Of a DNA stretch of 64,000 nt, positions 3,277 through 61,379 are shown one piece after another. The position numbers and the translations under genes are program-made. Source of the DNA: Mobula birostris (taxonomy: Eukaryota). The DNA is taken from assembly GCF_030028105.1 (NCBI RefSeq), contig NC_092374.1, forward strand, positions 175,360,057 through 175,424,056, in the 5' to 3' direction. Each line of letters opens with the position of its first letter. Position 1 is the stretch's first letter. The notes beneath the pieces are model-generated. The model was not told the DNA's origin, did no database searches, and worked only from the letters and a program-made list of their open reading frames with translations.

Positions 3277-3476
3277 CTTAAAAACGCAAACACGAGGAAT
3301 TCTGCAGATGCTGGAAATTCAAGCAACACACATCAAAGTTGCTGGTGAACGCAGCAGGCCAGGCAGCATCTCTAGGAAGAGATACAGTCGATGTTTCAGG
3401 CCAAGACCCTTCATCAGGACTCAGGCTTCGTCAGCAGCCTGGCCTGCTGCATTCACCAGCAACGTTGATGTGTGTG
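3277..3476 (-). mobile_element. Fold-back miniature Penelope-like insertion with 12-bp TSD
   Basis: PLE terminal sequence followed by its own partial inverted copy; flanked by GTTTGAGAGGTT at 3265-3276 and 3477-3488. Confidence 0.75.
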
Positions 3477-8710: not shown

Positions 8711-9726
8711 TGTCACAATGGGGGCATTGGTGGCGGACCCAAATGCAGGACACAGACACTGACGTACTAGGAACAGGACTAGGGAAGTGGAGAAGAAAGG
8801 ATGCTGGACATGACACAGACCTAGGACAAGACTAGGATACAGGGCCTGGGCTAGGACTTGACTAGGATAGTGGAACCAGGACATGGAACTAGGAACTAGG
8901 AGCCTGGGTGTGGATTCCGAGCCAGAGACTGGGCAAGGACCCAGAACCTGGGTCTTGACTTGGGCTCAGATCCCAAAACCAGACAAGGACATGACGTGGC
9001 TACTGGACAGGACATGACTGGGGTCTTGAGGCTTGAGGCTGGGGTCCCTGGCGACCAGGCAAAGGCGTGACGAGGCTGGGGTCCCTGGCGACCAGGCAAA
9101 GGCGTGACGAGGCTGGGGTCCCTGGCGACCAGGCAAAGGCGTGACGAGGCTGGGGTCCCTGGCGACCAGGCAAAGGCGTGACGAGGCTGGGGTACTGCGA
9201 GGCAACTCCTGGGCAGGATGCGGGACTCCTGGGCAGGACGCAGGACTCAAACCCGACGGAGGCAAGGGACCAGAAGGGACAGAACTCACTGCAGGGTAAC
9301 AGCAAACGGCCTGCCTTACCCAACAGAGGCAAGGGACAGGAAGGGAGCTAGGTCCAGGGTGGCTCCAAGACTCGAGGCAGTCGGTAACCTCAGCAGGCTA
9401 CAGAACAGCCAAATCCATATCTCAATGACTGCATTAGCCTTCCACCGGTGGGTTGCTCCAAGGCGAGACTGACAAGGTGCAAGCGAGGGTCACAGACGAG
9501 GCGAGGCAACAGAAGGAAAGAAAGGGATTCAGACAGGGTGTTTGGACAAGAACAATCCAGCAACCAAGTCCTGGTCTCTGGAGTTATTTATGAGTCTGCC
9601 CAAACTAGAATCATGTGCCTCAATTAGAGTGCTCAACAGAAATGGGGTAAACAGGAAAACCTGGAACGAGGGTCAATGGACCGGACCGTGAACCGGAATG
9701 CGGAATTCATGGACCGGACCATGACA
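8711..9726 (-). mobile_element. Solo LTR (family A), perfect 5-bp TSD
   Basis: TGTCA...TGACA termini; CCAAG at 8706-8710 and 9727-9731; the host CR1 reads continuously when the element is removed. Confidence 0.85.
9035..9193. repeat. 37-bp minisatellite, 4 perfect copies plus 11 bp
   Basis: GAGGCTGGGGTCCCTGGCGACCAGGCAAAGGCGTGAC starting at 9035, 9072, 9109 and 9146, partial at 9183. Confidence 0.95.

Positions 9727-16706: not shown

Positions 16707-16745
<39 letters not shown>
16707..16745. repeat. (CA)n microsatellite
   Basis: Perfect AC run at the PLE terminus. Confidence 0.95.
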
Positions 16746-16750
<5 letters not shown>

Positions 16751-16796
16751 CTGAGGGAATTCAGCAGGTCAGATAGCATCTATGGAAATGATAAAC

Positions 16797-16832
16797 AATC
16801 AACGTTTCAGGCTGAGACCCTTCTTCAGGACT
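16797..16832 (-). ncRNA. Minimal hammerhead ribozyme motif (GUU triplet)
   Basis: Minus strand AGTC-CTGAAGA-AGGGTCTCAGCCT-GAAAC-GTT-GATT. Confidence 0.45.
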
Positions 16833-18211
16833 GAGAAGGAAGGCAGAAGATGTCAGAATAAAAAGGTGGAAGGATGGGGAGGAGGCTAGCTAGAAGGTGA
16901 AAGGTGAAGCCAGGTGGGTGGAAAAGGTGAAGGGCTGGTGAAGAAGGACTCTGATAGGAGAGGAGAGAGGACTGTAGGAGAAAGGGAAGGAGGAGGGGAC
17001 ACAGGGGGAAGTGATAGGAAGGAGAGAAGAGGTAAAAGGCCACAGTGGGGAATAGAGGAAGAGGAGAGGTGGAGGGAATTTTTTTAACTGGAAGGAGAAA
17101 TCGATATTCATGCCATCAGGTTGGAGGCTACCCAGATGGAATAAAAGTTGTTGCTCCTCCACCCTGAGGGTGGCCTCCTCTTGGCAAAGAAGGAGGCCAT
17201 GGACTGACGTGTTGGAACGGGAAATAGAATTGGAATTAAAATGTTTGGCCACCGGGAAATTCCACTTTTGGCAAATGGTGCTTGATGAAGCAGTCCCCCA
17301 ATTTATGACATGTCTCACCAATGTAGAGGAGGCCAGATTGGGAGCACCAGACACAATGGTTGCCCCCCCCCACCCCCCCGCAGATTCACAGGTGAAGTGT
17401 TGCCTCACCTGGAAGGACTGCTCGGGGCTTTGAATGGAGATGAGGGATGAGGTGATTGGGTAGGTGTAGCACTTTGGCCACATGCAGGGATAAGTGCCGG
17501 GAGGGAGGGATGAATGGAAAAGGGAATCGCATAGGGAGCGATCCAAGGGGGTGGAGAAATAAAGATATATTCAGTGATACGATCCCTTTGGAGATGGCAG
17601 AGGTTGTGGATGATGGTGTGTCAGATGCGGTGGCTCATGGGATGTTAGGTAAGGACAAGGGGAACTCTATTACTGTTAAGGTGCTGGGAAGCTGGGGTGA
17701 GCAGAGATTTTCAGGAAATGTCGAGATGCAGGTGAGCGCAGTATCAATAGTGGAGGGATGGAAATCCCATTCTTTAAGAAGGAGGGCATTTCAGATGTCC
17801 TGGAAAGGAAAGCCACATCCTGAGAACAGATGCAATGGAGGTGAAGGAAATGAGAAAAAGGAAGAGCAGTTTTACAGAGATAGGTTGGGGAGAGGGTAGA
17901 TAGAGAGTTTTTCCCAGAGTGAATTGTAGCAGTGTTTAAGAGGGATTTAGTCAGCAAATGGAGGGATACAGACCATGTGTGGGCAGATGGGTTCAGTTTA
18001 AATTGACATCACGATCAGTACAGACATGGAAGGCTGAAAGGCCTTTTCCTGTGCTGTGCTGTTCTGGTTCTCAGTGGAGAGATCAAGAGTCCAAAACCTA
18101 TAGTCAAAGTTTTCAATAGCAAAGATAGGGGAGGGTCAGGTACAGCAGAGGGAAGGGTAAAGGTTTGCCAGACCTGATGAAAAGCCTCAAACCTGATAAA
18201 TTAACCCAGTT

Positions 18212-18402
18212 AACAGGTAAAAGTTGCTGGTGAACGCAGCAGGCCAGGCTGCATCTCTAGGAAGAGGTACAGTCGACATTTCGGGTCTCGAAACGTCGAC
18301 TGTACCTCTTCCTAGAGATGCTGCCTGGCCTGCTGCGTTCACCAGCAACTTTTATGTGTGTTGCTTGAAATTCCAGCATCTGCAGATTTCCTCGTGTTTG
18401 CG
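18212..18402 (+). mobile_element. Fold-back miniature PLE insertion (~65-bp inverted arms) with 14-bp direct repeat
   Basis: Arms ~18219-18283 and ~18289-18352 are near-perfect reverse complements; AAATTAACCCAGTT at 18198-18211 and 18403-18416. Confidence 0.8.
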
Positions 18403-25348: not shown

Positions 25349-28300
25349 CAAACAATAGAGTATCTGCAGATGCTGGAAATTACCGAGCAACAAATACAAA
25401 ATGCTGGAGGAACTCAGCAGGCCAGTCAGCATCAAGGAAAAGAGTACAGTCGATGTTTTGGTCCGAAACCCTTTGGCCCACTGCCAGTCACGTGGATACT
25501 CCCAGCCCACAGGGAACAACATCCAGCTTTGCAATCAGTGATTGCTTGCGGTGTACTAAGATTCAGTGTTCGAGTGCCATCATGAAAGATCCTGCAATGC
25601 ATAAATACATAAAGGTAATAAAAATAAAAACAATGTGAAATAAAGTGTTACAGGTACAGAGAAAGTGCAGTGCAGCAGTGTAACTGGTCTCTGAAAACTC
25701 GCAGCAACGCACACAAATTACTGGAGGAACTCAGCAGGCCAGGCAGCATCTATGGAAAAGAGTACCGTCGACGTTTCGGGCGAGGCCCTTCAGCAGGACT
25801 GAAAACTCACATTCATTCCTCTATTACATTTACTTGTATATAATGAGAACGGCATGGCCTATGTCACCCAGGCTGTTCTGAATTCATAACAGAGGAATGT
25901 CATTTTTATACTTAGTTGACTAGCATATACGGACATTGACCATTTGGTAAACTCTATGTTCAAATTCCTTACTTGCATGATCAATCACTATTCACAGTAC
26001 AGGTGTTAAAATCAATAGAAATTATAAGCTAACAATGAATGAAACTTTGAAAATAACAAAGTTATTGTCCCTTAGTTTGTGTGTCCCTTCTGCTACATCC
26101 TTACTTTGTCTCCCTATGTAAATGGCTCCAGTCCCCAACTGTACAAAGAGAAGCTAGGCTCTTCAGACATTTTTTGCCTGGGTTGACTGCACACTAACCA
26201 TCCTTGCCTGGAGATGTCTTAGCCCTTACCTTTCTGCAACTTCCACAGAGGCAGACAATGAGGAGCAAGATAATAAAGAGGTAGATTGTGAGGTCAAACA
26301 GCAATCTCACTGTACCAAGGAGCAATTCAATAGTCTTACAACAGTGCTGTAGAAGCTATCCTTGAGCCTGGCCTTTGATCAAGCTGTTTGCATGACTGAG
26401 ACAGCAAGAAATATAGAGAGTTTATGTGTGATAGGCTTGACAGTGGTCAAAACTTTGCAATATCCTGTGGTCTTGGGCAGAGCAACTGCCATACCAAGAT
26501 GTGTTGTATCTGGAAAGGATGCTCTCTATGGCGTATTTGTAAAAACAGGAAAGAGTCATCATGGATATGCCAAATTTCCTTAGCCTTCTGAGAAATCGAG
26601 GCATTGGTGGACCTTCTTTGCCATAGTGTCAATGTGGTTGGACCAGGACAAGCTATTGGTGAAAATTACACCTGGGAACTTGAAGTTGTCAGCCGTCTCC
26701 ACCTCAGCACCATTGATACAGACAGGAACATGGGCCCCATCCACCGTGAAGTCAATGACTAGCTCTTTTGTTTTGTTGACATTGAGGGAAAAGATGTTGC
26801 TTTGCCCGAGGATGCCACCTGGTCCATTTGGTGAATTGAGAAGTTCTTAGGCTGAGGGGCACAGTCAGGTGAAGCCAGCGTGAGTCACATTTCAGTGAGA
26901 CAGATTACACAGCAGTCCCTGAGTTCCTTTTAATACACGAGCGTAGCTTTAATTTCATCCCGTTTGTTTACAATGGCCTGGACTTGTGCCAGGTTTATAC
27001 TGGGGTGGGGGGATTTGAACCTGTGTTGTTTCAGGCTCACTGCAGCCCAGCCCTCCTCCCACATTTCCTGGGAGAGTGACTATGGTCGGCACAGCAGTTG
27101 GAGTGTGGAATCACTGATCCAGAAGATAGACGAAGGTATCAGGTGAAGTCCAGGAATCAGTTCACAGTGTTGGGTGTTCTGGACATTTGGTCTTTAGTAT
27201 CAGGTCATGGTATGGGCATTCCACATTATCAGGCCTTTCGTTCAGTTGTGCCCGGGATGGGATTGTGAGATAGGCCACTCCCACCGGTCAATGTTCATGT
27301 CTGGGTCAAGCCTTCAAAAGTCTGGTAGGTCACTCATCTATCCAAACATTGGAGACTGCATTTCCAGCGCTAGCAGTAAGTTCTCACTAGCTGAGCACTC
27401 CAGTAATTCGGGACCATTTTCAGCCTCACCGATTGGGTCCACTTGGGTTCGGGAGATTTAAGAGAACAGTTTAAGTAATTCTTACAGTCTTAGAATTGAG
27501 ATTTAAAAGAGAATGACTATAATGAGGGAATCTGCTGGGGACAACCCTCAAAGAGTCACCACATTCTGGAACCATTTAACTCCTCAGTTATCAGTGAGCA
27601 TTCTGAGTGATGAGTCCATTACTCTCACACAGTAAAATGAAAAAAACAGAAACATTACAAATAAGCATAAAAATAATTGTGATTCCTTTATAATTGCTTA
27701 TATTCTGAAATAACCCTGTGAAAGTGCACAATCTAAAATAACTAATTATATAAACCAGATTACTGCAACCTGTGTCTACAGTTTAGTACAATGGCAAAGT
27801 TTTCACTTGTCAGATTTTAAGGAACTAATTTATTAGTGATTGCATTAGACTCATCAGAATCTGAGCGAATTACTGACTGGGGCACAGAAGGTGTCAGGAC
27901 AAAGCCACTGAGGTTTACCCAAGGCCCAGTTAATGCTCATTGAAGACCTTGCCAGTACCTCACTATGACCACTTGGAAAGCAGTCAACACAGAAAATGTT
28001 TGACAGTGTGATTTTATCACAGTTTAATATTGAGCTTTATTCTGAATAATGTAATGATTTTAATGTTGTTTATTTTTTGGAATATAGTTTCATATTTGAG
28101 TTTATCTCAGATTTACTGTGATGTATTGCATATATTTACTGTGATTTATTGGTGGATTATTGATATATCAGATCAGGGGTTATTATTTGATAAGTTGGTT
28201 TATTGTTTAATTTTTGGGGGTCTAATCAGTATCTCAGTTTTTTTGTATTAAATCGTATTCATTTTGGTTTAATATTTGGAGTTACTTCAGTTAAGAGGTT

Positions 28301-29894: not shown

Positions 29895-30360
29895 ATAACA
29901 CAAAACAGCACACACAAAACGCTGGAGGAACTCAGCTGGTCAGGCAGCATCTATGGCAAAGAGTTAATAGTCACTGTTTTGGGCCAAGACCCTTCATCAG
30001 GACTGAGAAAGAAGGGAGAAGCTGCCGGAATAAAGAGCTGGGGGGAGGGGAAGGAGGCTAGCTGGAAGGTGATAGGTGAACCCAGGTGGGAGGGAAAGGT
30101 CGAGGGCCGGAGAGTAAGGAATTTGATAGGAGAGGAGAGTGGACCAGAGGAGAAAGGGAAGGAGGAGGGTCCCGGGGGAAGTAACAGGCAGGTGAAAAGA
30201 GGGAAAAGCTCAGAGTGGGGAACAGAGGAAGAAGGGAAGGGGGAAATTTGTTTACTGGAGGAGAAATTGATATTCATGTCATCAGGTCGGAGGCTACTCA
30301 AGATGGAATATAAGGAGCTGCCCTCCACCCTGAGGGTGGCCTCATCTTGGCACAATAGCA
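29895..30360. mobile_element. Penelope-like fragment in intron 2 (inverted terminal repeat plus GIY-YIG end)
   Basis: ORF 29951-30448 (-) contains DEATLRVEGSSLYSILSSLRPDDMNINFS; mutated hammerhead motif at 29969-30004. Confidence 0.7.
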
Positions 30361-30837
30361 CACAGACCATGAAACGCAGAGTCCCTGAAAGTAAGTCCTC
30401 AGATATGGAGCCAGGCAGCATCTGTGGGGGGAAATGGACAATTAACATTTCAGATCGAGATCCTTTAATCTTGAGGTCGATGAGGTTGGTGGAGGAGTGT
30501 GAATAGGTGATGAGCTGTGAGGAGATGGGGGGAGTGTGAGGGGGTGACAGGGTCTGGGGAAGTGTGTGTTGGGGGGGTGATGGTGTAGATTTTACTAATG
30601 CAAGTCACTGCTGGCAAACACCTGAGACCAGATGCTGTGGCCAAGATAAACCAACCATTTCATTATCTCACCCAATGTTTGGTTGGAAATCTGAAAACAC
30701 ATTTTTGTTGTCCCCGCTGGGTTCCCATTGGGTGTGGGCTGGTCTGGGTCTCTCCGTCCTACACTCCCACCCCCACACATTAGATTTTCTGTGCCCTTTC
30801 ACCTTGGTTAACCTGTATTCACGCTGTCTGCCCACAG

Positions 30838-31119
30838 TTCCCCCTCAGACTGCCATGTACCCCGAGGAACCCGTGGAGTGGGGTCAACCCAACACTTTGA
30901 TCTGTCTGGCTGATGGATTCTATCCTCCGAGCATCAGGATGACGTGGAAACGGAACAAGAATCCTGTGACCGGTGGAGTCAACACCACAGAGTACTACCT
31001 GAAGAGCGACTCCTCCTTCCAGAGATTCTCCTACCTGAGCTTTGTGCCAAGTCCTGGAGATATGTACTCCTGCCATGTGGAGCATGAGGCTATGAAGGAG
31101 CCAAGGGTTGTCTTCTGGG
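30838..31119 (+). CDS. mhc2a: MHC class II alpha chain, exon 3 (alpha2 Ig-C1 domain, 282 nt)
   Basis: Acceptor CCCACAG ending 30837; (V)PPQTAMYPEEPVEWGQPNTLICLADGFYPPSIRMTWKRN..YSCHVEH..VVFW; two Ig cysteines, C-strand Trp, NTT sequon; donor GTTAGT at 31120. Confidence 0.97.
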
Positions 31120-32269
31120 GTTAGTATGGACCAGGTTACCAACGGGAGGTGGGAGCTGATTCCAAGGTAGTTCTAAGGTCACCTGCTCTATTAGAAAGGC
31201 CTTAGCTTTCTGTTCCAGCCATAAGCAGGTGATCCTGTGTAAATACCATGTACTCTGGGTATTTGGGGCATGGGGTGAGTACAGGTGCGTACTGTGTTGA
31301 CTGGAAAAGAAAATAAATTCCATGATGCTGGAAATCTGAAAGATCAGGGAATGCTGGAATCACTCAGCAGGTCAGGTGGCATCTGTGGGAGAGAAACCCT
31401 TCATCAGAACTTGGGAAGTGAGAAAAGAAGAATGTTAAGTTGCAGAGATGGGGCAGGATGGTGTGACCAGGGGAAGCTCCTGGTCCAGGTGATACAGTAA
31501 CTCATCGCACCCTATAATGAAAGAATGTTGGTGAATCATAGGTAATCTATCTGATGAAGTGTGAACAGATGGGCAGGAAGGAGGGCAGAAGAAAGAAACA
31601 AAATACTGAAACTATGAGATAGAGAACTGAAATACTGTAGATCTGAAATCTGAGACTCAAGCAGGGCCTGTGAAGAGGAACTGAGTTATCTTTGCCAGTT
31701 AGTGGTCTTGCATCAGAATGAAGAGGAATGCTGGTTGTCTGGAATAGCTGAATTAATTGCTGAGTGATGATAGCAGCAATGTGACTTAGATTTTTACGCT
31801 GAGGCTTCAGTGGATCAGTGTGGGAAATCAGAGTGGGAGTGGAATGGAAAATTAAAGTAATTGGAGGATTTGGGCCACCCTATGGACTGAAAGAGATTTT
31901 CTGTACAATAGTCAGCCAGACTGTGTTTGGCTTCTCCAATGTAAAATCATAAGGTTTAGGAATAGGTCATAGGAGGCAGTCGTCAATCCCAGGGGATCAT
32001 AAAAAACAGAACATAGAGACATAGAAAACCTACAGCACAATACAGGCCCTTCGGCCCACAAAGCTGTGCCAAACATGTCCTTGCCTTAGAAATTACCGAG
32101 GCTTACCCATAGCCCTCTATTTTTCTAAGCTCCATGTACCTATCCAGGAGTCTCTTAAAAGACCCTATCGTTTCCGTCTCCACCACCGCCGCCAGCAGCC
32201 CATTCCACACACTCACCACTCTCTGCGTAAAAAACTTACCCTGACATCTCCACTGTATCTAATCATGGG

Positions 32270-36290: not shown

Positions 36291-36939
36291 TGAAGGGTGA
36301 TTGATAAGTTCGTGGCCTAAGGTAGAAGGAGTCAATTTTAGAGAACCTAGCACATTTATTTTTCAACATCGTCCCCTCTTACATTTGCACACTTAGTCCA
36401 GCGGTCGTGGAGCATATGGATCTTGGACCTCCAGAAAGGGTTCACAGCAGGGGAGACTGATAAGTTCGTGGCCTAAGGTAGAAGGAGATGTGTTAACCAC
36501 AGGAATTCTGCAGATGCTGGAAATTCAAGCAACACACATCAAAGTTGCTGGTGAACGCAGCAGGCCAGGCAGCATCTCTAGGAAGAGGTGCAGTCGACGT
36601 TTCAGGCCGAGACCCTTCGTCAGGACTAACTGAAGGAAGAGTGAGTAAGAGATTTGAAAGTGGGAGGGGGAGGGGGAGATCCAAAATGATAGGAGAAGAC
36701 AGGAGCTCTTGTTACATGCACATGCAAGTCAACTCTTTGAGTGATTATGCAGAAAGTTTGAAGCTAATAACTCATCAGGGGTGATTGATAGGTTCGTGGC
36801 CTAAGGTAGAAGGAGGTGAGTTATTAACTTCAAACTTTCTCCATAATCACTCAAAGGGTTGACCTGCATGAGCATGTAATCAGAGCTGTATAACTCATTT
36901 CCTTCTACCTTAGGCCACGAACTTATCAATCACCCCTTG
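36291..36939. mobile_element. Tc1/mariner-type non-autonomous element (MITE), 40-bp TIRs, TA TSD
   Basis: TIRs 36291-36330 and 36900-36939 match at 37/40; TA at 36289-36290 and 36940-36941; the host CR1 rejoins as GATCATAA-TA-TGATCAAATTC. Confidence 0.8.
36592..36627 (-). ncRNA. Minimal type I hammerhead ribozyme motif, intact core
   Basis: Minus strand AGTC-CTGACGA-AGGGTCTCGGCCT-GAAAC-GTC-GACT: stem I AGTC/GACT, CUGANGA and GAAA core, palindromic ACGT in place of stem III, GUC triplet. Confidence 0.65.
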
Positions 36940-42818: not shown

Positions 42819-43021
42819 CATCAAAGTTGCTGGTGAACGCAGCAGGCCAGGCAGCATCTATAGGAAGAGGTACAGTCAATGTTTCGGGCCAAGACCCTTC
42901 GTCCTGATGAAACTTCGACTGTACCTGTTCCTATAGATGCTGCCTGGCCTGCTGAGTTCACCAGCAACTTTGATGTGTGTTGCTTGAATTTCCAGCATCT
43001 GCAGAATTCCTCGTGTTTGCA
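42819..43021 (+). mobile_element. Fold-back miniature PLE insertion with 13-bp TSD inside BEL gag
   Basis: TTTCACTGACATT at 42806-42818 and 43022-43034; inverted arm followed by the forward PLE end. Confidence 0.85.
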
Positions 43022-43367
43022 TTTCACTGACATTGTTGCTTTTATTGAAAGGCAGGTAAAGATCATAACAGACCTGTTATCTGAGAATTTACAGATGCTC
43101 CATCACCTACAGTAAACAAAGGCGTGAACTAGAAAAAGTCACAATTTCGTTCTAAGGCTAAAGGAAGCAGTCTTGCCATGACTGTGGCCACTATGAGAAG
43201 TAAAACTAAAATTGAACCTGGAACTAATGGAAGGGAAATGATTTCATCAGTCTAAGGGGGCTGTCTGTTCTGTGAGGTTGAACTTACATTGGATTTGTGC
43301 CCTCATGGAGAAAAGGGTTCAGAGTGAGAAGATTGCCTTCCTAAAGAAAAATGATGTCTGTTTTGCA

Positions 43368-43394
<27 letters not shown>
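43368..43394. repeat. (CA)n microsatellite at a PLE terminus
   Basis: GCA(AC)n followed by GAGTGCTGGAGGAACTCAGCAGG. Confidence 0.9.
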
Positions 43395-43398
<4 letters not shown>

Positions 43399-46300
43399 GC
43401 TGGAGGAACTCAGCAGGCCAGGTAGCATCTATGGAAAAGAGTACAGTCAATGTTTCGGGCCAAGACCCTTCAACAGGAGTCTGCTTTGTCTGTTTGTGTA
43501 CAGGACACATCAGCAAGGATTGCAGGAAGCATAGTTCATACAGGGTATGCAGTGGCAAGCATCCCAGCATACTTCGTATTCACTCTGATGAAAAGGGTTT
43601 AGAATCCAAACAAGCTGTGAAAGAATCAGACGCAGCAGTGAGTAGTGCCCTGGTATCTAATGGCCTTGCAGGGGCTGGCAATCATGATTATAAACTTCCC
43701 ATAGTTCCAGTACAAGTGAAGTCTAAAAAGGGTAATGAGACAGTGGCTACTTATGCTTTCCTAGATCAAGATAGTACAACAGTTTTCTCCACAGTGGACC
43801 TCATGACCAAGCTCAACCTCACAGGAAAAAGGACATGCATTCTTTTACAAAATGGGTCAAGAGAATGTAATGAGTAGCTACATTGTTTCAGGATTAGAAG
43901 TGGCTGGCTTAGATGGTGAAAGCTATTGTAAACTACCTGGAAAGTATACGTGTCCACAGAGGGAAAACTCCACGTAGGAGGGATCTCCAGGGATATTCTC
44001 ACCTGAAACATGTCCATTTGCCAGAGATAGATTCAGAGATTGAGCTGCTGATAGGGACAAATGTGCATGAAGCATTGGAGCTGTTGCAAGTGATTCACAG
44101 TGTTAATAATGGACCTTATGCAATTAGAACAATGTTGGGCTGGACTGTGAGTGGAGACGATGGTGATAGGAAAGACTCTGCACAGCCTGAGCTGACAGTT
44201 AACACGATCTCAGCTTTGAACTTGGATAAGGTTTGCCAGTGGCATTTCAAGGCAGACTTCCCTGAATGCAGTCAAGATGAACAACTTGGTTCGTCAAGAG
44301 AAGATCACGTTCATGGAGCAAGTTGCAAATTCTGCAAAACTGGTGGATGGCCATTACCAGAAAAACGGTTAACATGCCAAATAACAATTAGATTGCAGAA
44401 CAGTGTGCTCTAAATCTCAGAGGTTTAGGAAGGATTTGTCATTTCTCACTGACTACACAGATTTCATGAGGATGTAATCTCCAAAGGTTATGCCAAAAGA
44501 GTGTCAGCAGAGGATCTGGAACACAGTGATGGGAAAGTCTGGTATATTTCACATCATGGTGTTTACCACCCCAGAAAAGGAAAACTTCATGTTGTGTTTG
44601 ACAGTGGAATGACTTTTCAGGGAATGCCACTTAATGCTCAGATTTTACAGGGACAAGATCTTACTAGCTCACTGATTGGGGTCATAGCCATATTCGGAAA
44701 CTAACCAGTGGTGATCATGACTGATATTGGATCAAAGTTTCACCAGCAGAATATGCAGATCTACTGAGGTTTCTCTGGTGGCCTGATGGTGACCTCAGCC
44801 AAGATATGGTGTACTATAGACAGGAGATTGAATTTACATTGAGCTGTGCCAACTTTGCCCTGAAGAAATGCACAGAAGACAATGCAGAACAGTTCAGTTG
44901 TGAGACAGTGGGTAAGGTTTTGCATTGCTTCTGTGTTGATGACTGCCTTGTGTCAGTGTTCTCTGAGGAAGAAGTGATGTTTCTCTATCATGACCTGGTA
45001 TCCATTTGTGCTAAAGGTAGCTTTCAACACACAAAGTAGATAGCAACAAACATACTTTGCTAGTTTAAGATCATGATCCAAGATCGATCACTCACTAGAA
45101 GGGGGATCCTCTCCACAGTTAGTTTCATCTATGATCCTTTAGGAATCTTGAGCTTGGAGGTGCTATCTGCTAAGAAGATCCTGTAAGGTCTATGTAAGAA
45201 AGAACTTGTCTGGGATGACATTATACCAACATCAGTTGCTCATGAGTGGACAAGCTGGCTGGAAGAACTCTGACGATTGGAAGATTTCAAAGTTGTTAAA
45301 TATGTGAAGCTCCTGGATTTTGGTGAAGTTATTGCTGCAGTTACACCACTCTACATACACAAGTGAAGAAGGCAATGGAGGAGAGACCTGCCTATTGTTG
45401 CACAACATGTGCTCTCTGGTGCAAAGTGCCTTGTTCATGGGAAGTCTAGGATAGCTCCACTGAAGTCAGTTTTCATCCCCCATAAGGAGCTCACTGCTGC
45501 TACAATGGCAAGCTGTATGGACACATTGTGGAGGAAGGCACATACAGCTTCATGATTCAGTTTATGGACTGATAGTACCTGTGTACAGACGTATATCAAG
45601 AACGAAACTTCCAGGTTCTGAATCTTCATTAAAAAACAGAAATTTTTAAGGTTTCACAGGCATCTAAATGGAAGTATGTAAACACTTAAAGCAACCCAGC
45701 TGATGTGGCCTCTAGTGGGTTGAAGGTGAAAGCATCGCTGAAGAATGAAGCATGGGTGTCAGGGCCTCAATATCTTCTTCTGCCTGAAATCTCAGTTGTT
45801 CTGGAGAACTCCTGCCACATGATCCGGAAGTCAAGAGTAATGTTACAATCAACGCTGTGCAGATTGAAGAGGAGGTGGACCTGGTAATATGTATAATCTA
45901 TTACTTCTCATCTAGGACCCATTTGAGGAAGACATTGGACTTGATTTTGAATTTAAGAACTTGCTCTTGTTTCTTAGTTGGAAGAGGAAGCAATTGAACA
46001 TTGAACATTGCTCTTGCTCGGTTTGGCTTGGATGAGTGTAACAATGATATTTTTGGCGAGAGAGATTGAGGCGGCCAGTGGTCAGATCGCCGAGATTGTC
46101 TCTTGATGGAGGAGCTCAGAAAAGATGAAATAGAGATCAGTTGGTTTTGTCAAAGAGAGGGATTTGCTGATGAATTCTCAAGTTTTCAAAGGGGAGAAAG
46201 CGTGAAAATGAACAGCCATATTTTCAAGCTTAATCCCGTACTTGAAGGTAGTATCTTGGTGGACAGCTTAGTAGGATAGCTATGCCTGAAGAGTCTGTAT

Positions 46301-48372: not shown

Positions 48373-49178
48373 CAACATACACAAAAAATGCCGGTGAACG
48401 CAGCAGGCCAGGCAGCATCTCTAGGAAGAGGTACAGTCGACGTTTCAGGCCGAGACCCTTCGTCAGGACTAACTGAAAGAAGAGATAGTAAGAGATTTGA
48501 AAGTGGGAGGGGGAGGGGGAGATCTGAAATGATAGGAGAAGACAGGAGGGGGAGGGATGGAGCTAAGAGCTGGAAAGTTGATTGGCAAAAGGGATACAAG
48601 GCTGGAGAAGGGAGAGGATTATGGCTGATGTTTCTATCCACGGCCTCCTCTACTGTCAGGATGAAGGCACACTCAGGTTGGAGGAACAACACCTTATATT
48701 CCGTCTGGGTAGCCTCCAACCTGATGGCATGAACATTGACTTCTCTAACTTCCGCTAATGCCCCACCTCCCCCTCGTACCCCATCCGTTATTTATCTATT
48801 TATTTATTTATTTTCATTCTCTCTCCCCCCCCCCACCTTTTTCTCTCTCTCTTTTTTTCTCCCTCTGACTCCTTGTCTGTTCTCCATCCTCTGGGCTCCC
48901 CTCCCCGCTTCTATCTTTCTCCCCGGGCTTCCCATCCCATGATCCTCTCCCTTCTCCAGCCTCATATTCCTTTTGCCAATCAACTTTCCAGTTCTTAGCT
49001 CCATCCCTCCCTCTCCTGTCTTCTTCCATCATTTCGGATCTCTCCCTCCCCCTCCCCCTTTCAAATCTCTGACTATCTCAACTGTACCTCTTCCTAGAGA
49101 TGCTGCCTGGCCTGCTGTGTTCACCAGCATTATTTGTGTGTGTTGCTTGAATTTCCAGCTTCCGCAGATTTCCTCGAG
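48373..49178. mobile_element. PLE insertion: inverted terminal repeat, GIY-YIG end and forward terminal repeat, 12-bp TSD
   Basis: ATGGCTTTTTAG at 48361-48372 and 49179-49190 inside a CR1 EN fragment; DEGTLRLEEQHLIFRLGSLQPDGMNIDFSNFR near 48660-48756. Confidence 0.85.
48435..48470 (-). ncRNA. Minimal hammerhead ribozyme motif, intact core
   Basis: Identical to 36592-36627. Confidence 0.65.
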
Positions 49179-49697: not shown

Positions 49698-50841
49698 ATA
49701 GAAACATAGAAACATAGAAAATAGGTGCAGGAGTAGGCCATTCGGCCCTTCGAGCCTGCACCGCCATTTATTATGATCATGGCTGATTATCCAACTCAGA
49801 ACACCGCTCCAGCCTTCCCTCCATACCCCCTGACCCCCGTAGCCACAAGGGCCATATCTAATTCCCTCTTAAATATAGCCAATGAACTGGCCTCAACTGT
49901 TTCCTGTGGCAGAGAATTCCACAGATTTACCACTCTCTGTGTGAAGAAGTTTTTCCTAATCTCGGTCCTAAAAGGCTTCCCCTCTATCCTCAAACTGTGA
50001 CCCCTCGTTCTGGACTTCCCCAACATCGGGAACAATCTTCCTGCATCTAGCCTGTCCAATCCCTTTAGGATTTTATACGTTTCAATCAGATCCCCCCTCA
50101 ATCTTCTAAATTCCAACGAGTACAAGCCCAGTTCATCCAGTCTTTCTTCATATGAAAGTCCTGCCATCCCAGGAATCAATCTGGTGAACCTTCTTTGTAC
50201 TCCCTCTATGGCAAGGATGTCTTTCCTCAGATTAGGGGACCAAAACTGCACACAATACTCCAGGTGTGGTCTCACCAAGGCCTTGTACAACTGCAGTAGT
50301 ACCTCCCTGCTCCTGTACTCGAATCCTCTCGCTATAAATGCCAGCATACCATTCACCTTTTTCACCGCCTGCTGTACCTGCATGCCCACTTTCAATGACT
50401 GGTGTATAATGACACCCAGGTCTCGTTGCACCTTCCCTTTTCCTAATCGGCCACCATTCAGATAATAATCTGTTTTCCTATTTTTGCCACCAAAGTGGAT
50501 AACTTCACATTTATCCACATTAAATTGCATCTGCCATGAATTTGCCCACTCACCCAACCTATCCAAGTCACCCTGCATCCTCTTAGCATCCTCCTCACAG
50601 CTAACACTGCCACCCAGCTTCGTGTCATCCGCAAACTTGGAGATGCTGCATTTAATTCCCTCATCCAAGTCATTAATATATATTGTAAACAACTGGGGTC
50701 CCAGCACTGAGCCTTGCGGTACCCCACTAGTCACCGCCTGCCATTCTGAAAAGGTCCCGTTTATTCCCACTCTTTGCTTCCTGTCTGCTAACCAACTCTC
50801 CACCCACACCAATACCTTACCCCCAATACCGTGTGCTTCTC
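49698..50841 (-). mobile_element. Young 5'-truncated CR1 (uninterrupted RT C-terminal ORF plus tail)
   Basis: [46 protein letters not shown] with no stops to 49796; (TTTCTATG)n tail. Confidence 0.9.
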
Positions 50842-50871
50842 TTACTGGAGAGCAGGAGCCGAGTAGGTGGA

Positions 50872-51372
50872 GAAAGCAACACACAACAATGTTGCTGGTG
50901 AACGCAGCAGGCCAGGCAGCATCTCTAGGAAGAGGTACAGTCGACGTTTTGGGCTGAGACCCTTCGTCAGGACTAACTGAAGGAAGAGTTAGTAAGAGAT
51001 TTGAAAGTGGGAGGGGGAGATCCAAAATGATAGGAGAAGACAGGAGGAGGAGGGATGGAGCCAAGAGCTGGACAGGTGATTGGCAAAAGGGATATGAGAG
51101 GATCATGGGACAGGAGACCCAGGGAGAAAGACAAAGGCGGGGGGGGGGGGAGAACCCAGAGGATGGGCAAGGGGTATAGTCAGAGGGACAGAGGGAGAAA
51201 AAGGAGAGTGAGAGAAAGAATGTGTATATAAAAATAAATAACGGATGGGGTACGAGGGGGAAGTGGGGCATTAGCGGAAGTTAGAGAAGTCAATGTTCAT
51301 GCCATCAGGTTGGAGGCTACCCAGACGGAACATAAGATGTTGTTCCTCCAACCTGAGTGTGGCTTCATCTTT
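50872..51372 (-). mobile_element. PLE 3' end (GIY-YIG end plus terminal repeat); hammerhead GAAA mutated to AAAA at 50939-50974
   Basis: ORF 51271-51492 ends DEATLRLEEQHLMFRLGSLQPDGMNIDFSNFR. Confidence 0.85.
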
Positions 51373-51799: not shown

Positions 51800-53290
51800 A
51801 CCGCCACTCCACAATCCCATGTCTCGCAGGTCCCACTGCCAGTTCCTGGGTCTATGGAGACTCCATCTTCCTCTCACCCCACCATCCCTGAACACCCCAA
51901 ACCTCCCTTCTCCTCAGACACTACCAACCTCCAATCCCAGCTTTCATCCGTGCCAGGTTTTCACTATTCCCTCTGACCTTCCCCTCTCTGAAGCAGAACA
52001 TTCTGTGCTTAGTAAGGGCCTCACCTTTGTCTCTCCGCGCCCACACCTCAGTGAGTTCTGCACCCGCCATGACGCTGAGCTCTTCTTCCACTGCCTCCAT
52101 CTTCAAGCCTATTTCTTTGGCAAGGAATCTCCACTCTGCACCGATGACCCCTTATTCCGTCTTCAACCATTCTCCTCTTCCTAGACACCCAGCCCTGGTC
52201 TTCTGCCTGCTCTGGACTTTTTCGTTGCCAACTGCCAACTGCTATTAACCGTCTAGACTTCGACACAAGTCACTCCTTCCAACTTCACTCCTTCCGAACG
52301 TTCTGTTCTCCACTCCCTCCGCACTAACCCTAACCTCACCAACAAACCCGCAGATAAGGGAGGCGCTGTAGTAGTCTGGTGTACTGACCTCTATCTCGCT
52401 GAGGCTCAGCATCAATTCTGAGACACCTCCTCTTACTTACCCCTTGAACAGGACCCCACTAAGGAACACCAAGCCATTGTCTCCCACACCATCACCAACC
52501 TTATTGACTCTGGGGATCTCCCATCCACCGCCACCAACTTCATAGTTCCTGCAGCCCGCACCTCCTGTTTATACCTCCTACCCAAGATCCACAAACCCAC
52601 TTGACAAGGTGGACCCATTGTTTCAGCTTGTAACAATAAACTCAAATGGGCATTCCTCAATTCTGTTTTATCCCACCTACATTTGTGACACCTCACACAT
52701 TCTTGATCTTTTCAGTGATTTCAGGTTCCCTGGCCCCCTTCATCTTATTTTTACTATGGATGTCCAGTCCCTATACACCTGCATCCTCCACCAGGAAGGC
52801 CTTAAAGCTCTCTTTTTTTCTGGACACCAGGCCTAACCAGTTCCCCTCCACCACCACTCTCTTCCATCTAGTGGAACTTGTCCTCACTCTCAATAATTTC
52901 TCCTTTGGCTCTTCCCACTTCCTTCAAACAAAAGAGGTAGCCATGGGCACTTGCATGGGTCTCAGCAATGCCTGGTTGTTTGTCGGCTGTGTGGAACAGT
53001 CTATGTTCCAAGTCTACACTGGTGGCCGTCCCCCACTTTTCCTATGCTACATTAACGCTTCCTGCACCCATGCCGAGCTCATCGACTTCATCCGCTTTGC
53101 CTCCAACTTCCAACCAGCCCTCAAATTTACCTGGTCTGTTTCTGACACCTCCATCCCCTTTTGCGATCTCTCTTTCTCTATCTCTGGAGACAGTTTATCC
53201 AATTTGGGTAGCCTCCAACCTGATTGGATGAACATCGATTTCTCAAACTTCTGGTAATGCCCCTCACCCCCCTCTCCTTCACCATTCCCC
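51800..53290 (+). mobile_element. Penelope-like RT region, decayed, internally deleted and joined to the GIY-YIG C-terminus
   Basis: 51765-52184 (VFTIPSDLPLSEAEHSVLSKGLTF); 52646-53257 (IFTMDVQSLYT..LVLTLNNFSF..VAMGTCMG..LKFTWS..then LGSLQPDWMNIDFSNF). Confidence 0.85.
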
Positions 53291-54826: not shown

Positions 54827-55189
54827 AATATTGTTGGTGATGAGCCTCATCACTGTCATGTCATTGGTGAACCTGACAATGGGATTGCTCGGGGTGGCTG
54901 TGTAGTCTTGCATAAGCTCAGCACACAGCCCTCTAAGAGGCAATAATTCACAAAAGCCCACTACCATCACCCTCGGTCTCCTATTGCCAAGTCAAGTTTG
55001 GATCCAATTTGCCCCTTTGCTCTGCATTCCATGGGCCCTAGCCTTCTGGACCAGTGTCCTATGGGGGACCTTGTCAAGTACCATACACTGCATCCACCAC
55101 GGTCACTGCACTGTCCTTATCAATAAATTTTGTTATCTCCTCAATGAATACAATCAGAATGATTTGCCTTTGACCAGGATCAGGAACCA

Positions 55190-55749
55190 GGATCCCCCAG
55201 TGACTGCCCATGTTAACTTCATTTCCCATTCCAATTCCAACATGTCAATCCATGGCCTCCTCTACTGTTGTGATGAGGCAACACTCAGGTTGGAGGAACA
55301 AATCCTTATATTCTGTCTGGGTTGTCTCCAACCTGATGGCATGAACATCAATTTCTCGAACTTCCGGTAATGACCCTCCCCTCTCCTTCACCATTCCCCA
55401 TTCCCTTTTCCCTCTCTCACCTTATCTCCTTGCCTGCCCATAGCCTCCTTCTGTTTCTCCTCCCCCTTTTTTTCTTCCATGGCCTTCTGTCCTCTCCTAT
55501 CAGATTTCCCCATCTCCAGCCTTTTATCTCTTTCACCAATCAACTTCCCAGCTCTTTACTTCACCCCTCTCCTAGTTTAACCTATTACCCTGTGTTTCAC
55601 CCTCCCCTCCCCCCAACTTTTAACTCTGACTCTTCATCTGTTTTTTCTCCAGTCCTACTGAAGGATCTTGGCCCGAAAAGGTCAACTGTACTCTTTCCCT
55701 TGGATGCTGCCTAACCTGCTGAGTTCCTCCAGCATTTTGTGTGTGTTGC
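55190..55749 (+). mobile_element. PLE 3' end, sense to the MHC transcript, hammerhead core degenerate
   Basis: DEATLRLEEQILIFCLGCLQPDGMNINFSNFR; AGTC-CTACTGA-AGGATCTTGGCCC-GAAAAG-GTC-AACT near 55652-55688. Confidence 0.8.
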
Positions 55750-58330: not shown

Positions 58331-58728
58331 TTCATCAGCATGTGCCACCTAGGAGGGTGCTCGGTGTATAGAGGAATTTCTACAAGGTTCTGAAGCAGAG
58401 ATATCATAAGATCATAAGACATAGGAACAGAATTAGACCATTCAGCCCATCGAGTTTGTTCTGGCATTCCTTCATGACTGATTTATTATCCCTCTCAACT
58501 CCATTCTCCTGCCTTCATCTTTGATGTCCTGACTAATGAAGAACCTTTCCACCTCTGTTGTAAATATATCCAATGACTTGACCTCCATAACCTTCTGTGG
58601 CAATGAATTTCACTGATTCACCATCCTCTGGCTAAAGAAATTCCTCCTCATCTCCATCCTAAAGGGATATTCTTGTATTGTGAGGCTGTGTCCGCTGGTC
58701 TTAGAGTGCCCCAGTACAGGAAACAACT

Positions 58729-58827
58729 CACATCAAAGTTGCTGGTGAACGCAGCAGGCCAGGCAGCATCTGTAGGAAGAGGTGCAGTCGACGTTTCAGG
58801 CCGAGACCCTTCGTCAGGACTAACTGA
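58729..58827 (-). mobile_element. 99-bp PLE terminal fragment with 11-bp TSD
   Basis: AGGAAACAACT at 58718-58728 and 58828-58838 inside a CR1 3' fragment. Confidence 0.85.
58786..58821 (-). ncRNA. Minimal hammerhead ribozyme motif, intact core
   Basis: Identical to 36592-36627. Confidence 0.65.
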
Positions 58828-61379
58828 AGGAAACAACTTCTCAACATCCAATCTGTGTAAGCCTTTCAATATTTGATAGGTTTCAATGAGACTCCCTCCC
58901 CTCACCCCCATTCTTCTAAACTCCAGTAAGTACAGGCTCAGACCTATCAAATGCTCCTCATACATTAACCCTTTCATTCCTGGAATCATTCTTATAAACA
59001 TCCTCTGAATGGTGCACATCTTTTCTTAGATAAGGGGCCTAAAACAGCTCATAATACTCCAAGTGCTGCCCAACCATTGCCTTATAAAGAATCAGCAATA
59101 TGTCATTGCATTTATATTCTAGCCCTCTTGAAATGAATGCTAACATTGCATTTGCCATCCTTACCACCAACTCAACATGCAAGTTAACCTTTAGAGAATC
59201 CTGTACAAGGACTCCCAAGTCCCTTTGCACCTCTGATTTTTAAAATTTTCTCCCCATTTAGAAAATAGTCTACATTTTTATTCCTTCTATCAAAGTACAG
59301 CACCATACACTTCCCTACATTATATTCCATCTGCCACTTCCGTGCCCATTCACCTAATCTGTTTAAATCCTTCTGCAGACTCCCTGCTTTTTCAAAACTA
59401 CCTGCCCTTCTATTATTATGGCTGCTTCTTTCCCCTCATACTCACTCTTCTACCTTCTCTCTGTAAGTATCAACTTCTTTACCAATAAGTACCTATCAAT
59501 CTCTGCCATGAATACCTCAAGTCTCCGTGGGAGGAAATTCCACAGATTCACAATCATCTGGATGATAAATTTCTTCATCATCTCAGTTCTAAGGGGACAG
59601 TCCTTTATTCTGAAACAGTATCCTCAAATACTAAGCTGTCCTAATAAATCTCTATGGCCAGCCTCTCCAGGTCTTTCAGTATCTGGCAGATCTGAATGAG
59701 TTTCCACTATCCCTGCGCACCACCCCACCCCACCACCATTCTTCTGAACATCATTGAGTGCAGGCCGAGAGACATCAAATGCTCCTCATAGTCCTCACGT
59801 GCTAAGTTTTTCATCCTTGGGATCATTCTTGCAAACTTCCCCTGGACCCTCTCCACGGCCAGCACATCTTTCTTTAGATATGGGGCCCAAAATATCACAG
59901 TATTCCAAATGAGGCCCGATGAATACTTTATAAACCTCAGTCGTACATCCTTGCTTTTATATTCTTGTCCACTCAAAATGTATGCTAACATTGTATTCGC
60001 CTTCCTTACTATTGAATCTACCTGCAAGTTAATCTTGATGGAATCTTGAACTAGGACTCCCAAGTCCTTCTGCACCTCTGTTTTCTGAATGCTCTCCCAA
60101 TTAAAAAAAAATACACCTTTAGTTTTCCTACCAAAGTGTACAAATCCACACTTCCCTACTCTGCATTTCATCTGCCAAAATTGTACCGACTCTCCCAACC
60201 TGTCCAAGTTTTCTGCCTCTGTAATGTTACCTGCCTCTCTACCTATCTTTGTATCATCTGCAAACTTGGTCACAATGGCATCACTTCCTTTATAAACATT
60301 ATTAATGAATAAAAGTGATGGTCCCAAAACTGACCCTTGTGGAACAACATCCTGAAAGGGACCCTTTTATTTCCTCTCTCTGCTCTTTGCTAATCAGCCA
60401 ATCTTCTATCCATGCACTAGCACCTTGCCTCTAACACCATGGGCTCTCCTTCAGCAGCCTTTAGTGGAGCACTTTGTCAAAGACCTTCTAAAAATCCAAG
60501 TATGTAACATCCAACAACTCCCACAAGAAGCTGGGTGAATTTAGCAAGCAGTCAGCACCTATGGGGAGAAATAAACTTTCATACTGGAAAGGAAGGAGGC
60601 AGAAACCAGAATAAAATGTTGGGGGAAGGGGAACAGCATAAGCTAGCAGGAAATAGGTGAGGGGGAGAAGGCACAAGGGTGGGTAAGGGGGTTAAAAGGG
60701 AATGATGGGAGGTGATAGGTGGAAGAGGCAAAGGGCTGAAGAAGAAGGAATCTGAAAGTGAAGGCAGCTGATGGGCAGATCTTGAGGGCAGGAGAGGGGA
60801 AGAGAAGACGGTTCACATGAAAGGGGAGAAACAAAAGGGGGGAATTGAAAACCTTGGTGAGTGGTTACCAGAAGTTGGAGAAATCAGTGTTAATCCTATT
60901 GGACCATCAGACACATCTTCACCTCCCATACCCTCTCCGTGATTCCCTCTCCACTCAGCCCTCCCACCAATCTCCCTTCAGGAATTTATCCCTGCAACTA
61001 TGCTATGTATTACACCTGCCCCTATTCCTCCTCCTTCACCACCATTCGAGGCCCTAAACAGACCTTCTGGGTGAGGGAACACTCACCTGTGAGTCTATCG
61101 GGATCATTTCCTGCATCTGGTGCTCTAGTGCAGCCTCCTCTACATTAGTGAGGTCCAACATAGATTGGGGGACTGCTTTGTCAAAAACCTTTGCTCCATC
61201 TGCAGCAACAGGCAGGATCTCCTGGTAGCTACCATTTTCAATTCTGCTTCCCACTTGAAAAATGGCATTATACCCATCCATGGCATATACTGCCATGCTG
61301 AGGCCAGATGCAGGTTGGAGGAGTAACTCCACATATTCTGTCTTGGTCCCTCTGGTATCTCTGGCAACTTAATGTACAA

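What the first reader, a model, noticed from the sequence alone, without database searches (positions are those of the whole stretch)
36592..36627. Dispersed family of 36-nt minimal hammerhead ribozymes lacking a stem III loop
Seen (minus strand): AGTC-CTGACGA-AGGGTCTCGGCCT-GAAAC-GTC-GACT, identical at 36592, 48435 and 58786, with variants at 3386, 16797, 25766, 29969, 43445 and 50939. Stem I closes exactly around the core, and stem III is reduced to the palindrome ACGT. Established: PLE terminal repeats carry minimal hammerheads that can cleave as dimers through palindromic stem III. Inference: an active self-cleaving family in this genome at roughly one copy per 5-6 kb here. Several inactivating changes are CpG-type (CGAAA>CAAAA, ACGT>ACAT).
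Basis: partly seen in the sequence, partly recalled or inferred. Interest (0 to 1): 0.7.

Follow-up and report, generated by a model that had tools for sequence, protein, structure and literature searches.

The report
Penelope retrotransposon minimal hammerhead copies
The 36-base motif is real and is the loop-less "minimal hammerhead ribozyme" that Penelope-like retrotransposons carry near their 3' ends, here in a very abundant manta-ray family, so it is an ordinary new member of a known kind, and nothing here shows that these copies cut themselves.

Summary
Observation confirmed. The 36-nt motif is identical at 36592, 48435 and 58786 (minus strand), and all six reported variants exist. About 23 family fragments lie in the 64 kb; 14 keep the motif region and 4 keep an intact catalytic core.

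It is the minimal type I hammerhead of a Penelope-like element (PLE):
- CUGANGA and GAAA boxes, a GUC cleavage triplet, and a 4-5 bp helix I.
- A 4 bp helix II with a tetraloop, plus the extra nucleotide between A9 and 10.1.
- A palindromic ACGU in place of helix III.

Four copies carry the motif 250-300 nt downstream of a decayed PLE GIY-YIG endonuclease C-terminus. The copies also show:
- 5' truncation.
- Two alternative 3' ends about 35 nt apart (the PLE "tail").
- Head-to-head fold-backs with the tail on one arm only.
- 11-14 bp target-site duplications.

Activity is not shown. Rfam gives no hit, the window copies show no covariation above shuffles, and nearest-neighbour folding favours an inactive rod hairpin over the dimeric hammerhead. 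Only contigs of unknown RNA/DNA type were available, so no RNA ends could be mapped.

The scan has noted this family many times elsewhere in this genome. Verdict: new member of a known kind, low interest.

The parts
36592..36627 (-). Core-intact minimal type I hammerhead motif (subfamily A). Helix I AGUC/GACU, CUGACGA box, extra A, helix II GGGU/GCCU with CUCG loop, GAAA box, palindromic ACGU. Predicted cut after C17, between 36596 and 36595.
   Evidence: folding
48435..48470 (-). Identical core-intact motif.
58786..58821 (-). Identical core-intact motif, inside a ~104-nt solo insertion (about 58724-58827). The insertion is flanked by a 6-10 bp direct repeat (GTTGTTTCCT at 58828-58837 and 58718-58727).
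16797..16832 (-). Subfamily B motif with the core still intact (N7=A, U17 instead of C17, one G.U pair in helix I). It lies ~250-260 nt downstream of a PLE endonuclease remnant.
3386..3421 (-). Variant with ACAU (helix III palindrome broken by a CpG transition). It is the tail-bearing arm of a fold-back insertion at 3277-3476, with TSD (G)TTTGAGAGGTT.
50939..50974 (-). Variant with G12>A (loss of the general base; CpG transition). It lies 299 nt downstream of a PLE endonuclease remnant at 51274-51372.
25766..25800 (-). Decayed variant: A6>C and a 1-nt deletion in helix II.
29969..30004 (-). Decayed variant: G12>A, with helix III and the cleavage triplet scrambled. It lies downstream of the PLE remnant at 30047-30361.
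43445..43480 (-). Decayed variant: A6>U, G16.2>A, C17>U.
55651..55687 (+). Decayed plus-strand copy, 283 nt downstream of the PLE endonuclease remnant at 55083-55367.
36497..36705 (-). The 5'-truncated PLE 3' end that carries the reported motif: ~78 nt of pLTR, the hammerhead, ~65 nt, a stem-loop, then the ~35-nt tail.
17094..17923 (-). Decayed PLE ORF remnant: a CX4CX2C-type linker and the GIY-YIG endonuclease C-terminus, with the GIY-YIG motif region out of frame. It is immediately upstream of the copy bearing the 16797 motif.
   Evidence: (BLASTP 3e-43 to Hypanus sabinus P0001)
51274..51372 (-). PLE endonuclease C-terminal remnant upstream of the 50939 copy.
18212..18402 (.). Head-to-head fold-back of two 5'-truncated copies. 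Both arms begin inside helix II, so there is no complete hammerhead. Only one arm has the tail. 14-bp TSD AAATTAACCCAGTT.
42819..43021 (.). Head-to-head fold-back with the tail on the plus arm only. 13-bp TSD TTTCACTGACATT.

Best explanation
**What it is.** The motif is the minimal, helix-III-less type I hammerhead found in the pseudo-LTR and 3' region of a Penelope-like retrotransposon. The element is probably of the Neptune type, judging from the CX4CX2C linker before the GIY-YIG domain. It has amplified to very high copy number in this manta-ray genome.

**What the window copies are.** They are mostly dead-on-arrival, 5'-truncated products of target-primed reverse transcription. Reverse transcription began at one of two internal sites, about 68 and about 102 nt downstream of the predicted cleavage site. 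This explains why every copy carries the hammerhead plus a short 3' segment, with or without a ~35-nt tail.

**Inferred role.** In transcripts of master elements, the hammerhead probably processes the RNA by cutting after GUC. Because ACGU is palindromic, two copies can pair to build helix III, and helix I also forms between the two copies, giving a double hammerhead. Alternatively, the element's own protein assists folding, as shown for the Anolis Poseidon element.

**After insertion.** Copies decay neutrally, chiefly by CpG transitions.

**Shown versus inferred.** Shown here: motif anatomy, family membership, the link to a PLE ORF, and the insertion signatures. Inferred: the cleavage itself and its role.
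For: **Motif anatomy**
- The copies match the published consensus of metazoan PLE minimal hammerheads, including features that the search pattern did not require.
- These features are the extra nucleotide between A9 and 10.1, G10.1-C11.1 (subfamily B) or G.U (subfamily A), and palindromic 15.2-16.2 (PMC4209133).

**Link to a PLE ORF**
- ORF 16890-17546(-) aligns at 3e-43 with the C-terminus of Hypanus sabinus protein P0001.
- P0001 has a sub-threshold GIY-YIG Pfam hit.
- Its Atlas neighbours carry RVT_1, HTH_animal and GIY-YIG.
- tblastn finds eight such remnants in the window. Four of them lie 250-300 nt upstream of a hammerhead on the same strand.

**PLE insertion hallmarks (described in PMC8557442 and PMC11167929)**
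- Strong 5' truncation.
- Two 3' ends about 35 nt apart.
- Three head-to-head fold-backs with the tail on one arm only.
- TSDs of 11-14 bp.

**Abundance and variation in other runs**
- 7169, 9529, 1783 and 31 contigs from four runs of four organisms lie on the 241-nt stretch.
- Within the hammerhead, the only variants at 10% or more are four CpG transitions and the pair-preserving U/C change at 11.1.
- Contig alignments break preferentially at both hammerhead borders.

**Conservation between subfamilies**
- Between subfamilies A and B the hammerhead is the best conserved block: 84% identity, against 59% upstream and 73% downstream.
Against: - No Rfam hammerhead model matches, even at E<=10. 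This is expected for a motif without helix III, but it gives no independent support.
- The window copies show no covariation above shuffled controls: 80% of cells paired against 80.5% shuffled, with one compensatory cell.
- Nearest-neighbour models put the double-hammerhead fold at -9.5 kcal/mol. Two rod hairpins score -20 together and an extended duplex scores -28.3.
- In its 148-nt context the hammerhead is not in the MFE structure, and the z-score is only -1.1.
- No RT domain of a PLE lies next to any copy in the window, and no full-length element was seen.
- No raw RNA reads were available. Expression and cleavage are therefore untested.
Confidence: 0.88

Rival explanations
1. The motif is inherited from PLE hammerheads but no longer works, or never worked in this lineage, as a ribozyme. 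What is conserved is the 12-bp interrupted rod hairpin that the monomer prefers, for example as a structural or protein-recognition element of the element RNA. Alternatively, the hammerhead simply hitch-hikes on the PLE.
For: - The monomer MFE is a rod hairpin in which G5-A6-N7-G8 pairs with C15.2-G16.2-U16.1-C17. It is far more stable than the catalytic fold.
- Published metazoan PLE hammerheads cleave poorly (PMC4209133).
- Catalytic mutants do not affect insertion in vitro, and cleavage needed added protein (PMC11167929).
- Naiad PLEs thrive without hammerheads, and the authors raise the possibility that hammerheads parasitise PLEs (PMC8557442).
Against: - All 11 invariant core nucleotides are kept in the youngest copies and in both subfamilies. 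A plain hairpin would not require this.
- The one frequent polymorphism in a helix preserves pairing in the hammerhead helix II.
- PLE hammerheads from fungi and from Anolis do cleave.
Confidence: 0.15
2. The short copies that begin at the hammerhead form a separate non-autonomous, retrozyme-like or SINE-like element that propagates through self-cleaved, possibly circular, small RNAs.
For: - The 5' ends of short copies cluster 0-8 nt upstream of the hammerhead.
- Contig depth falls about 5-fold there.
- One contig joint in each of two runs links the 3' region (36522) to 36595, the first nucleotide after the predicted cut.
- Animal retrozymes are reported to derive from PLE pLTRs (bioRxiv 10.64898/2026.07.22.740005).
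Against: - There is no tandem array of the unit in the window and no tRNA-like head.
- Short and long copies share the same sequence and the same 3' ends, so simple 5' truncation explains them.
- Short copies start upstream of the cut site, not at it.
- The joint rests on a single contig per run. With 26 joint endpoints listed on about 200 positions, one landing on that site has a chance of roughly 1 in 8.
Confidence: 0.07
3. A chance hammerhead look-alike in an ordinary LINE-tail SINE.
For: - Several copies end in (TG)n.
- A CR1/L2-type RT ORF (49796-51271, minus) abuts copy 50939.
Against: - That RT is a separate, 5'-truncated LINE whose frame happens to stay open through the copy.
- Four hammerhead-bearing copies follow a GIY-YIG remnant at a fixed distance.
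- Tail, fold-back and TSD signatures are PLE-specific.
- Four matches to the descriptor occur against 0.01 expected.
Confidence: 0.02

Closest known systems
Minimal hammerhead ribozymes (min-HHR) of metazoan Penelope-like elements (Cervera & de la Pena 2014, PMC4209133; Lunse, Weinberg & Breaker 2016, cited in PMC6765202)
   Same: - Type I topology with CUGANGA and GAAA boxes.
- No helix III loop, and palindromic 15.2-16.2.
- An unpaired nucleotide between A9 and 10.1.
- A short helix I (4-5 bp) without loop-loop contacts.
- Located in the pLTR.
- Thousands of mostly solitary genomic copies that fall into consensus families.
   Different: - Helix II is short (4 bp including wobble pairs, CUCG tetraloop). 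The Schistosoma and Drosophila examples have 6-8 bp.
- In the young subfamily A, 11.1 is U, giving G.U (or an A-U pair in another register) instead of the conserved G10.1-C11.1.
- The papers I read do not name a cartilaginous-fish example. One preprint counts retrozymes in a single unnamed chondrichthyan.
Poseidon element of Anolis carolinensis, PAc (Frangieh et al. 2024, PMC11167929)
   Same: - The hammerhead lies at the pLTR/ORF boundary.
- Reverse transcription starts at two adjacent internal sites in a stem-loop some 85-90 nt beyond the cut, producing an optional 30-40 nt tail.
- Here the two 3' ends lie about 68 and 102 nt beyond the predicted cut, next to a predicted stem-loop.
   Different: - In PAc the ORF starts at helix II. 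In the manta copies the frames opening at or after the hammerhead are short or closed (my reading of the sequences).
- The stem-loop is GU-rich here rather than AC-rich.
- Protein-assisted cleavage is demonstrated for PAc and untested here.
Animal non-LTR retrozymes (Cervera & de la Pena 2020, PMC7229834; Li et al. 2026 preprint)
   Same: Type I hammerheads with a weak helix III that act as dimers. They are derived from PLE pLTRs.
   Different: Retrozymes are tandem arrays that give circular RNAs. In this window the copies are dispersed solos or head-to-head pairs, with no tandem.

Membership tests
Hammerhead ribozyme, type I, PLE minimal variant | Catalytic boxes C3-U4-G5-A6-N7-G8-A9 and G12-A13-A14, with A15.1-U16.1 and a non-G at position 17 | tested here: met
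   All are present in 36592, 48435, 58786 and 16797 (U17 in the last). They are broken in the other 10 motif-bearing copies.
Hammerhead ribozyme, type I, PLE minimal variant | Helices I and II flank the core in type I order | tested here: met
   Helix I is 4 bp (5 bp in subfamily B). Helix II is 4 bp plus a tetraloop. 80% of cells are paired across 14 copies, falling to 21-50% when the partner is slid by 1-2 columns.
Hammerhead ribozyme, type I, PLE minimal variant | Covariation supporting the helices | tested here: inconclusive
   The observed score does not exceed shuffles, and there is one compensatory cell. The frequent U/C change at 11.1 preserves pairing. The copies are too few and too closely related for a real test.
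Hammerhead ribozyme, type I, PLE minimal variant | Extra nucleotide between A9 and 10.1, and palindromic 15.2-16.2 replacing helix III (consensus in PMC4209133) | tested here: met
   An A follows CUGANGA in all copies. ACGU is present in intact copies.
Hammerhead ribozyme, type I, PLE minimal variant | Match to a curated covariance model | tested here: not met
   No Rfam 15 hammerhead family matches, at gathering score or at E<=10. I expect those models to require a helix III hairpin, from my knowledge of them, so a miss is likely for this variant.
Hammerhead ribozyme, type I, PLE minimal variant | Site-specific self-cleavage | not testable with these tools
   Only Logan contigs of uncertain RNA/DNA type were available, and they cannot show RNA ends. 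Energy models do not favour the active fold.
Penelope-like element (EN+) | [quoted passage not shown] | tested here: inconclusive
   Endonuclease C-terminal remnants are present. The stingray homologue has a sub-threshold GIY-YIG hit (18.8 bits against a cut-off of 22.6), and its Atlas neighbours carry RVT_1, HTH_animal and GIY-YIG. No PLE RT domain was seen in the window itself.
Penelope-like element (EN+) | Hammerhead located in the pLTR downstream of the ORF | tested here: met
   In four copies the hammerhead lies 250-300 nt past the end of the endonuclease remnant, on the same strand.
Penelope-like element (EN+) | 5' truncation, an adjacent inverted 5'-truncated copy, a 30-40 bp tail at one end only, and TSDs (PMC8557442) | tested here: met
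   There are three fold-backs with the tail on one arm and TSDs of 11-14 bp. Short and long 3' ends lie about 35 nt apart.
Non-LTR retrozyme | Head-to-tail tandem repeats, each with a hammerhead | tested here: not met
   TRF finds no array of the unit in the window. The nearest same-strand copies are separated by unrelated sequence.
tRNA-derived SINE with LINE tail | A tRNA-like pol III head | tested here: not met
   ARAGORN finds nothing in the window. The 5' extension of long copies is a PLE ORF remnant.

The most novel reading that the evidence does not exclude
The very abundant ~105-140-nt copies that begin 0-8 nt upstream of helix I may not be random truncations. They could reflect a defined RNA 5' end just before the hammerhead, for example an internal promoter or the 3' splice-site-like signal (branch-point-like CTSAC, pyrimidine tract, AG) that both subfamilies keep there. 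That would define a mini-element of hammerhead plus R-like segment that is processed at GUC and can be copied head-to-tail, as the 36595-to-36522 contig joint might hint.
Probability: 0.1. Interest if true: 0.5.

Novelty: new member of a known kind. Interest (0 to 1): 0.2.

Why it matters
The finding adds a cartilaginous-fish, very high-copy example to the known association between Penelope-like elements and minimal hammerheads. This single locus shows the hammerhead, the two reverse-transcription start sites (the tail) and the fold-back insertions side by side. For annotators of this genome it explains a repeat that recurs every few kilobases, including inside an MHC class II region. It also warns against reading each copy as an active ribozyme. 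It does not open a new question: whether metazoan PLE hammerheads cleave in vivo, and what for, remains unsettled in the papers read here (PMC4209133, PMC8557442), and this locus cannot settle it.

Tried and rejected
- **Rfam scans:** the whole window at gathering score and the 241-nt locus at E<=10 gave no hammerhead hit. The locus scan returned only two weak, irrelevant matches.
- **First pattern search:** it used the wrong spacer length and found nothing. A fuzzy-regex script timed out. Both were replaced by BLAST, nhmmer and a gapped pattern.
- **Pfam on ORFs near the copies:** this identified a CR1/L2-like RT, an AP endonuclease fragment and an Ig C1-set exon, none belonging to the element. 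The PLE remnant was missed by Pfam and was recognised only through the stingray homologue.
- **DNA of the Hypanus locus:** I tried to fetch it for a cross-species hammerhead comparison, but no DNA was served.
- **RNA runs:** I looked for runs to map 5' ends at the cut site. Only contigs of unknown type were available, so starts, ends, strand and expression could not be read.
- **Covariation test:** it was uninformative.
- **Variant density:** high-frequency variants are about as dense inside the hammerhead as in the flanks in the contig data. My count is 1 of 36 positions against 12 of 146 in the two closest runs, which is not significant.
- **Consensus:** I built no consensus of the element and compared real copies only.

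Full report
**1. Observation**

On the minus strand at 36627 to 36592 the sequence reads helix I strand AGTC, CTGACGA, A, GGGT-CTCG-GCCT, GAAA, CGTC, then helix I strand GACT. The same 36 nt occurs exactly at 48435 and 58786, and with three mismatches at 3386 and 50939. None is expected in shuffles.

Further decayed copies lie at 55651(+), 42874, 25448, 14494 and 30440. A gapped descriptor (CTGANGA, 8-24 nt, GAAACGT) finds four core-intact copies against 0.01 expected.

**2. What carries it**

BLAST and an nhmmer profile show the motif sits in a dispersed repeat with about 23 copies or fragments in 64 kb.

Element layout:
- A variable 5' part, C/T-rich and up to 500-800 bp.
- The hammerhead.
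- About 65 nt of spacer.
- A stem-loop.
- One of two 3' ends: short, or extended by a ~35-nt tail.

Two subfamilies are visible. Subfamily A has CTGACGA and GCCT; subfamily B has CTGATGA and GCCC.

The long copies continue upstream into a decayed ORF:
- ORF 16890-17546(-) aligns at 3e-43 with the C-terminal 135 residues of an uncharacterised Hypanus sabinus protein, P0001.
- P0001 shows a CX4CX2C linker and an LLYIGET motif.
- It has a sub-threshold Pfam GIY-YIG hit.
- Its Atlas neighbours carry RVT_1, HTH_animal and GIY-YIG.
- An RT combined with a GIY-YIG endonuclease is the defining architecture of endonuclease-bearing Penelope-like elements (PMC8557442).

tblastn with the stingray proteins finds eight such remnants in the window. 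Four of them lie 250-300 nt upstream of a hammerhead on the same strand: 17094 to 16832, 51274 to 50974, 55367 to 55651, and the 30047 region to 30004.

The RT ORF at 49796-51271(-) that overlaps copy 50939 is a separate CR1/L2-type LINE fragment (FADD motif). Its frame stays open through the copy by accident.

**3. Insertion signatures**

Three head-to-head fold-backs lie at 3277-3476, 18212-18402 and 42819-43021. Each has the tail on one arm only, and each is flanked by a target-site duplication of 11-14 bp. The solo copy at about 58724-58827 has a 6-10 bp duplication.

Published descriptions list these features for PLEs (PMC8557442):
- Strong 5' truncation.
- An adjacent inverted truncated copy.
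- A 30-40 bp tail at one end.

The tail is explained by two adjacent internal start sites of reverse transcription in a stem-loop downstream of the hammerhead (PMC11167929). Here the two ends lie about 68 and 102 nt past the predicted cut, beside a predicted stem-loop.

There is no tRNA-like head and no tandem array of the unit in the window.

**4. The hammerhead itself**

Beyond the boxes any search would demand, the copies show three features that Cervera and de la Pena list as emergent properties of metazoan PLE minimal hammerheads:
- An unpaired nucleotide between A9 and 10.1.
- G10.1-C11.1 (subfamily B). Subfamily A has G.U after a CpG transition, or A-U in an alternative register.
- Palindromic 15.2-16.2.

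Core status of the 14 motif-bearing copies:
- Four keep the whole core.
- The others have G12>A, A6>C or A6>U, or a broken ACGU.

**5. Evidence from other runs**

No run on record as RNA holds the stretch. All runs offered are Logan contigs of uncertain type, so expression, strand and RNA ends cannot be read.

The contigs still show several things:
- The family is enormous: 7169 and 9529 contigs in the two closest runs, 1783 in a third organism and 31 in a fourth.
- Within the hammerhead, the only variants reaching 10% are four CpG transitions (G12A, G16.2A, C17U, G1.1A) and the pair-preserving U/C at 11.1.
- Alignments break preferentially at both borders of the 36-nt block.
- Summed depth falls about five-fold just upstream of helix I.

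Between subfamilies A and B in the window, the hammerhead is the best conserved segment: 84% identity against 59% upstream and 73% downstream. This fits constraint on master copies, but the sample is small. The density of high-frequency variants does not differ significantly from that in the flanks.

**6. Does it cleave?**

Nothing here shows it.
- Rfam has no match.
- Covariation in the window is no better than shuffles.
- The 36-nt monomer prefers a rod hairpin (-10.0 kcal/mol) in which G5-G8 pair with C15.2-C17.
- The double-hammerhead dimer evaluates at -9.5 kcal/mol, against -28.3 for an extended duplex.
- In a 148-nt context the catalytic fold is absent from the MFE structure.

These models ignore tertiary contacts. 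They do agree with the literature: cleavage is very low even for dimers (PMC4209133), and the Anolis Poseidon element cleaves only when its own protein is added (PMC11167929).

The intact copies in the window are solitary and more than 10 kb apart. Dimerisation would need long transcripts or pairing in trans.

**7. Verdict**

This is a real feature of a known kind: the minimal hammerhead of a Penelope-like element, here in a very abundant batoid family. The claim of an active self-cleaving family is untested and is likely true, at most, for master elements.

Earlier notes of this scan on other parts of the same genome reached the same reading for solo and fold-back copies. I re-derived it independently from this window.

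Noticed in passing
window 36624-36641, and copies at 3386, 25766, 43445, 58786: The 5' ends of short copies cluster 0-8 nt upstream of helix I, and contig depth drops about 5-fold there. Both subfamilies keep a branch-point-like CTSAC, a pyrimidine tract and AG immediately before helix I. This looks like a 3' splice site, recalling the intron end reported at helix I of D. virilis Penelope.
   Followed up: partly
window 36595 joined to 36522 (contigs of runs X1 and X2): One contig in each of two runs joins the element's 3' region to the first nucleotide after the predicted cleavage site, a 74-nt head-to-tail unit. It may be a single genomic locus or chance.
   Followed up: no
window 48937-49147 (+): This copy of subfamily A lacks about 45 nt, removing the whole hammerhead plus 11 nt upstream. 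The deletion has a TC microhomology at its edges. The copy lies head-to-head with the copy carrying the intact motif at 48435.
   Followed up: partly
window 36704-36887; 36445-36495 and 36773-36823: A 184-bp imperfect palindrome (77% identity) lies directly upstream of the 36592 copy. 51-nt direct repeats flank the region, so another repeat family is probably nested here.
   Followed up: no
window 9035-9193: A perfect tandem of a 37-bp G+C-rich unit, 4.3 copies at 100% identity.
   Followed up: no
window 52968-53251 (+) and 60945-61362 (+): Further PLE ORF remnants. The first has an internal deletion that joins residues ~71 and ~356 of the stingray homologue. No hammerhead was detected downstream of either.
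   Followed up: no
window 30564-31124 (+), 11211-12011 (-), 2377-3087 (+): An Ig C1-set exon (MHC class II context), an AP-endonuclease LINE fragment, and a LINE C-terminal ALKBH8_N-like fragment.
   Followed up: no
window 16735-16790 and 43330-43385: Two subfamily B copies end in long (TG)n runs. This may be insertion into microsatellites, a bias reported for some PLEs, or expansion of the element's own GU-rich end.
   Followed up: no
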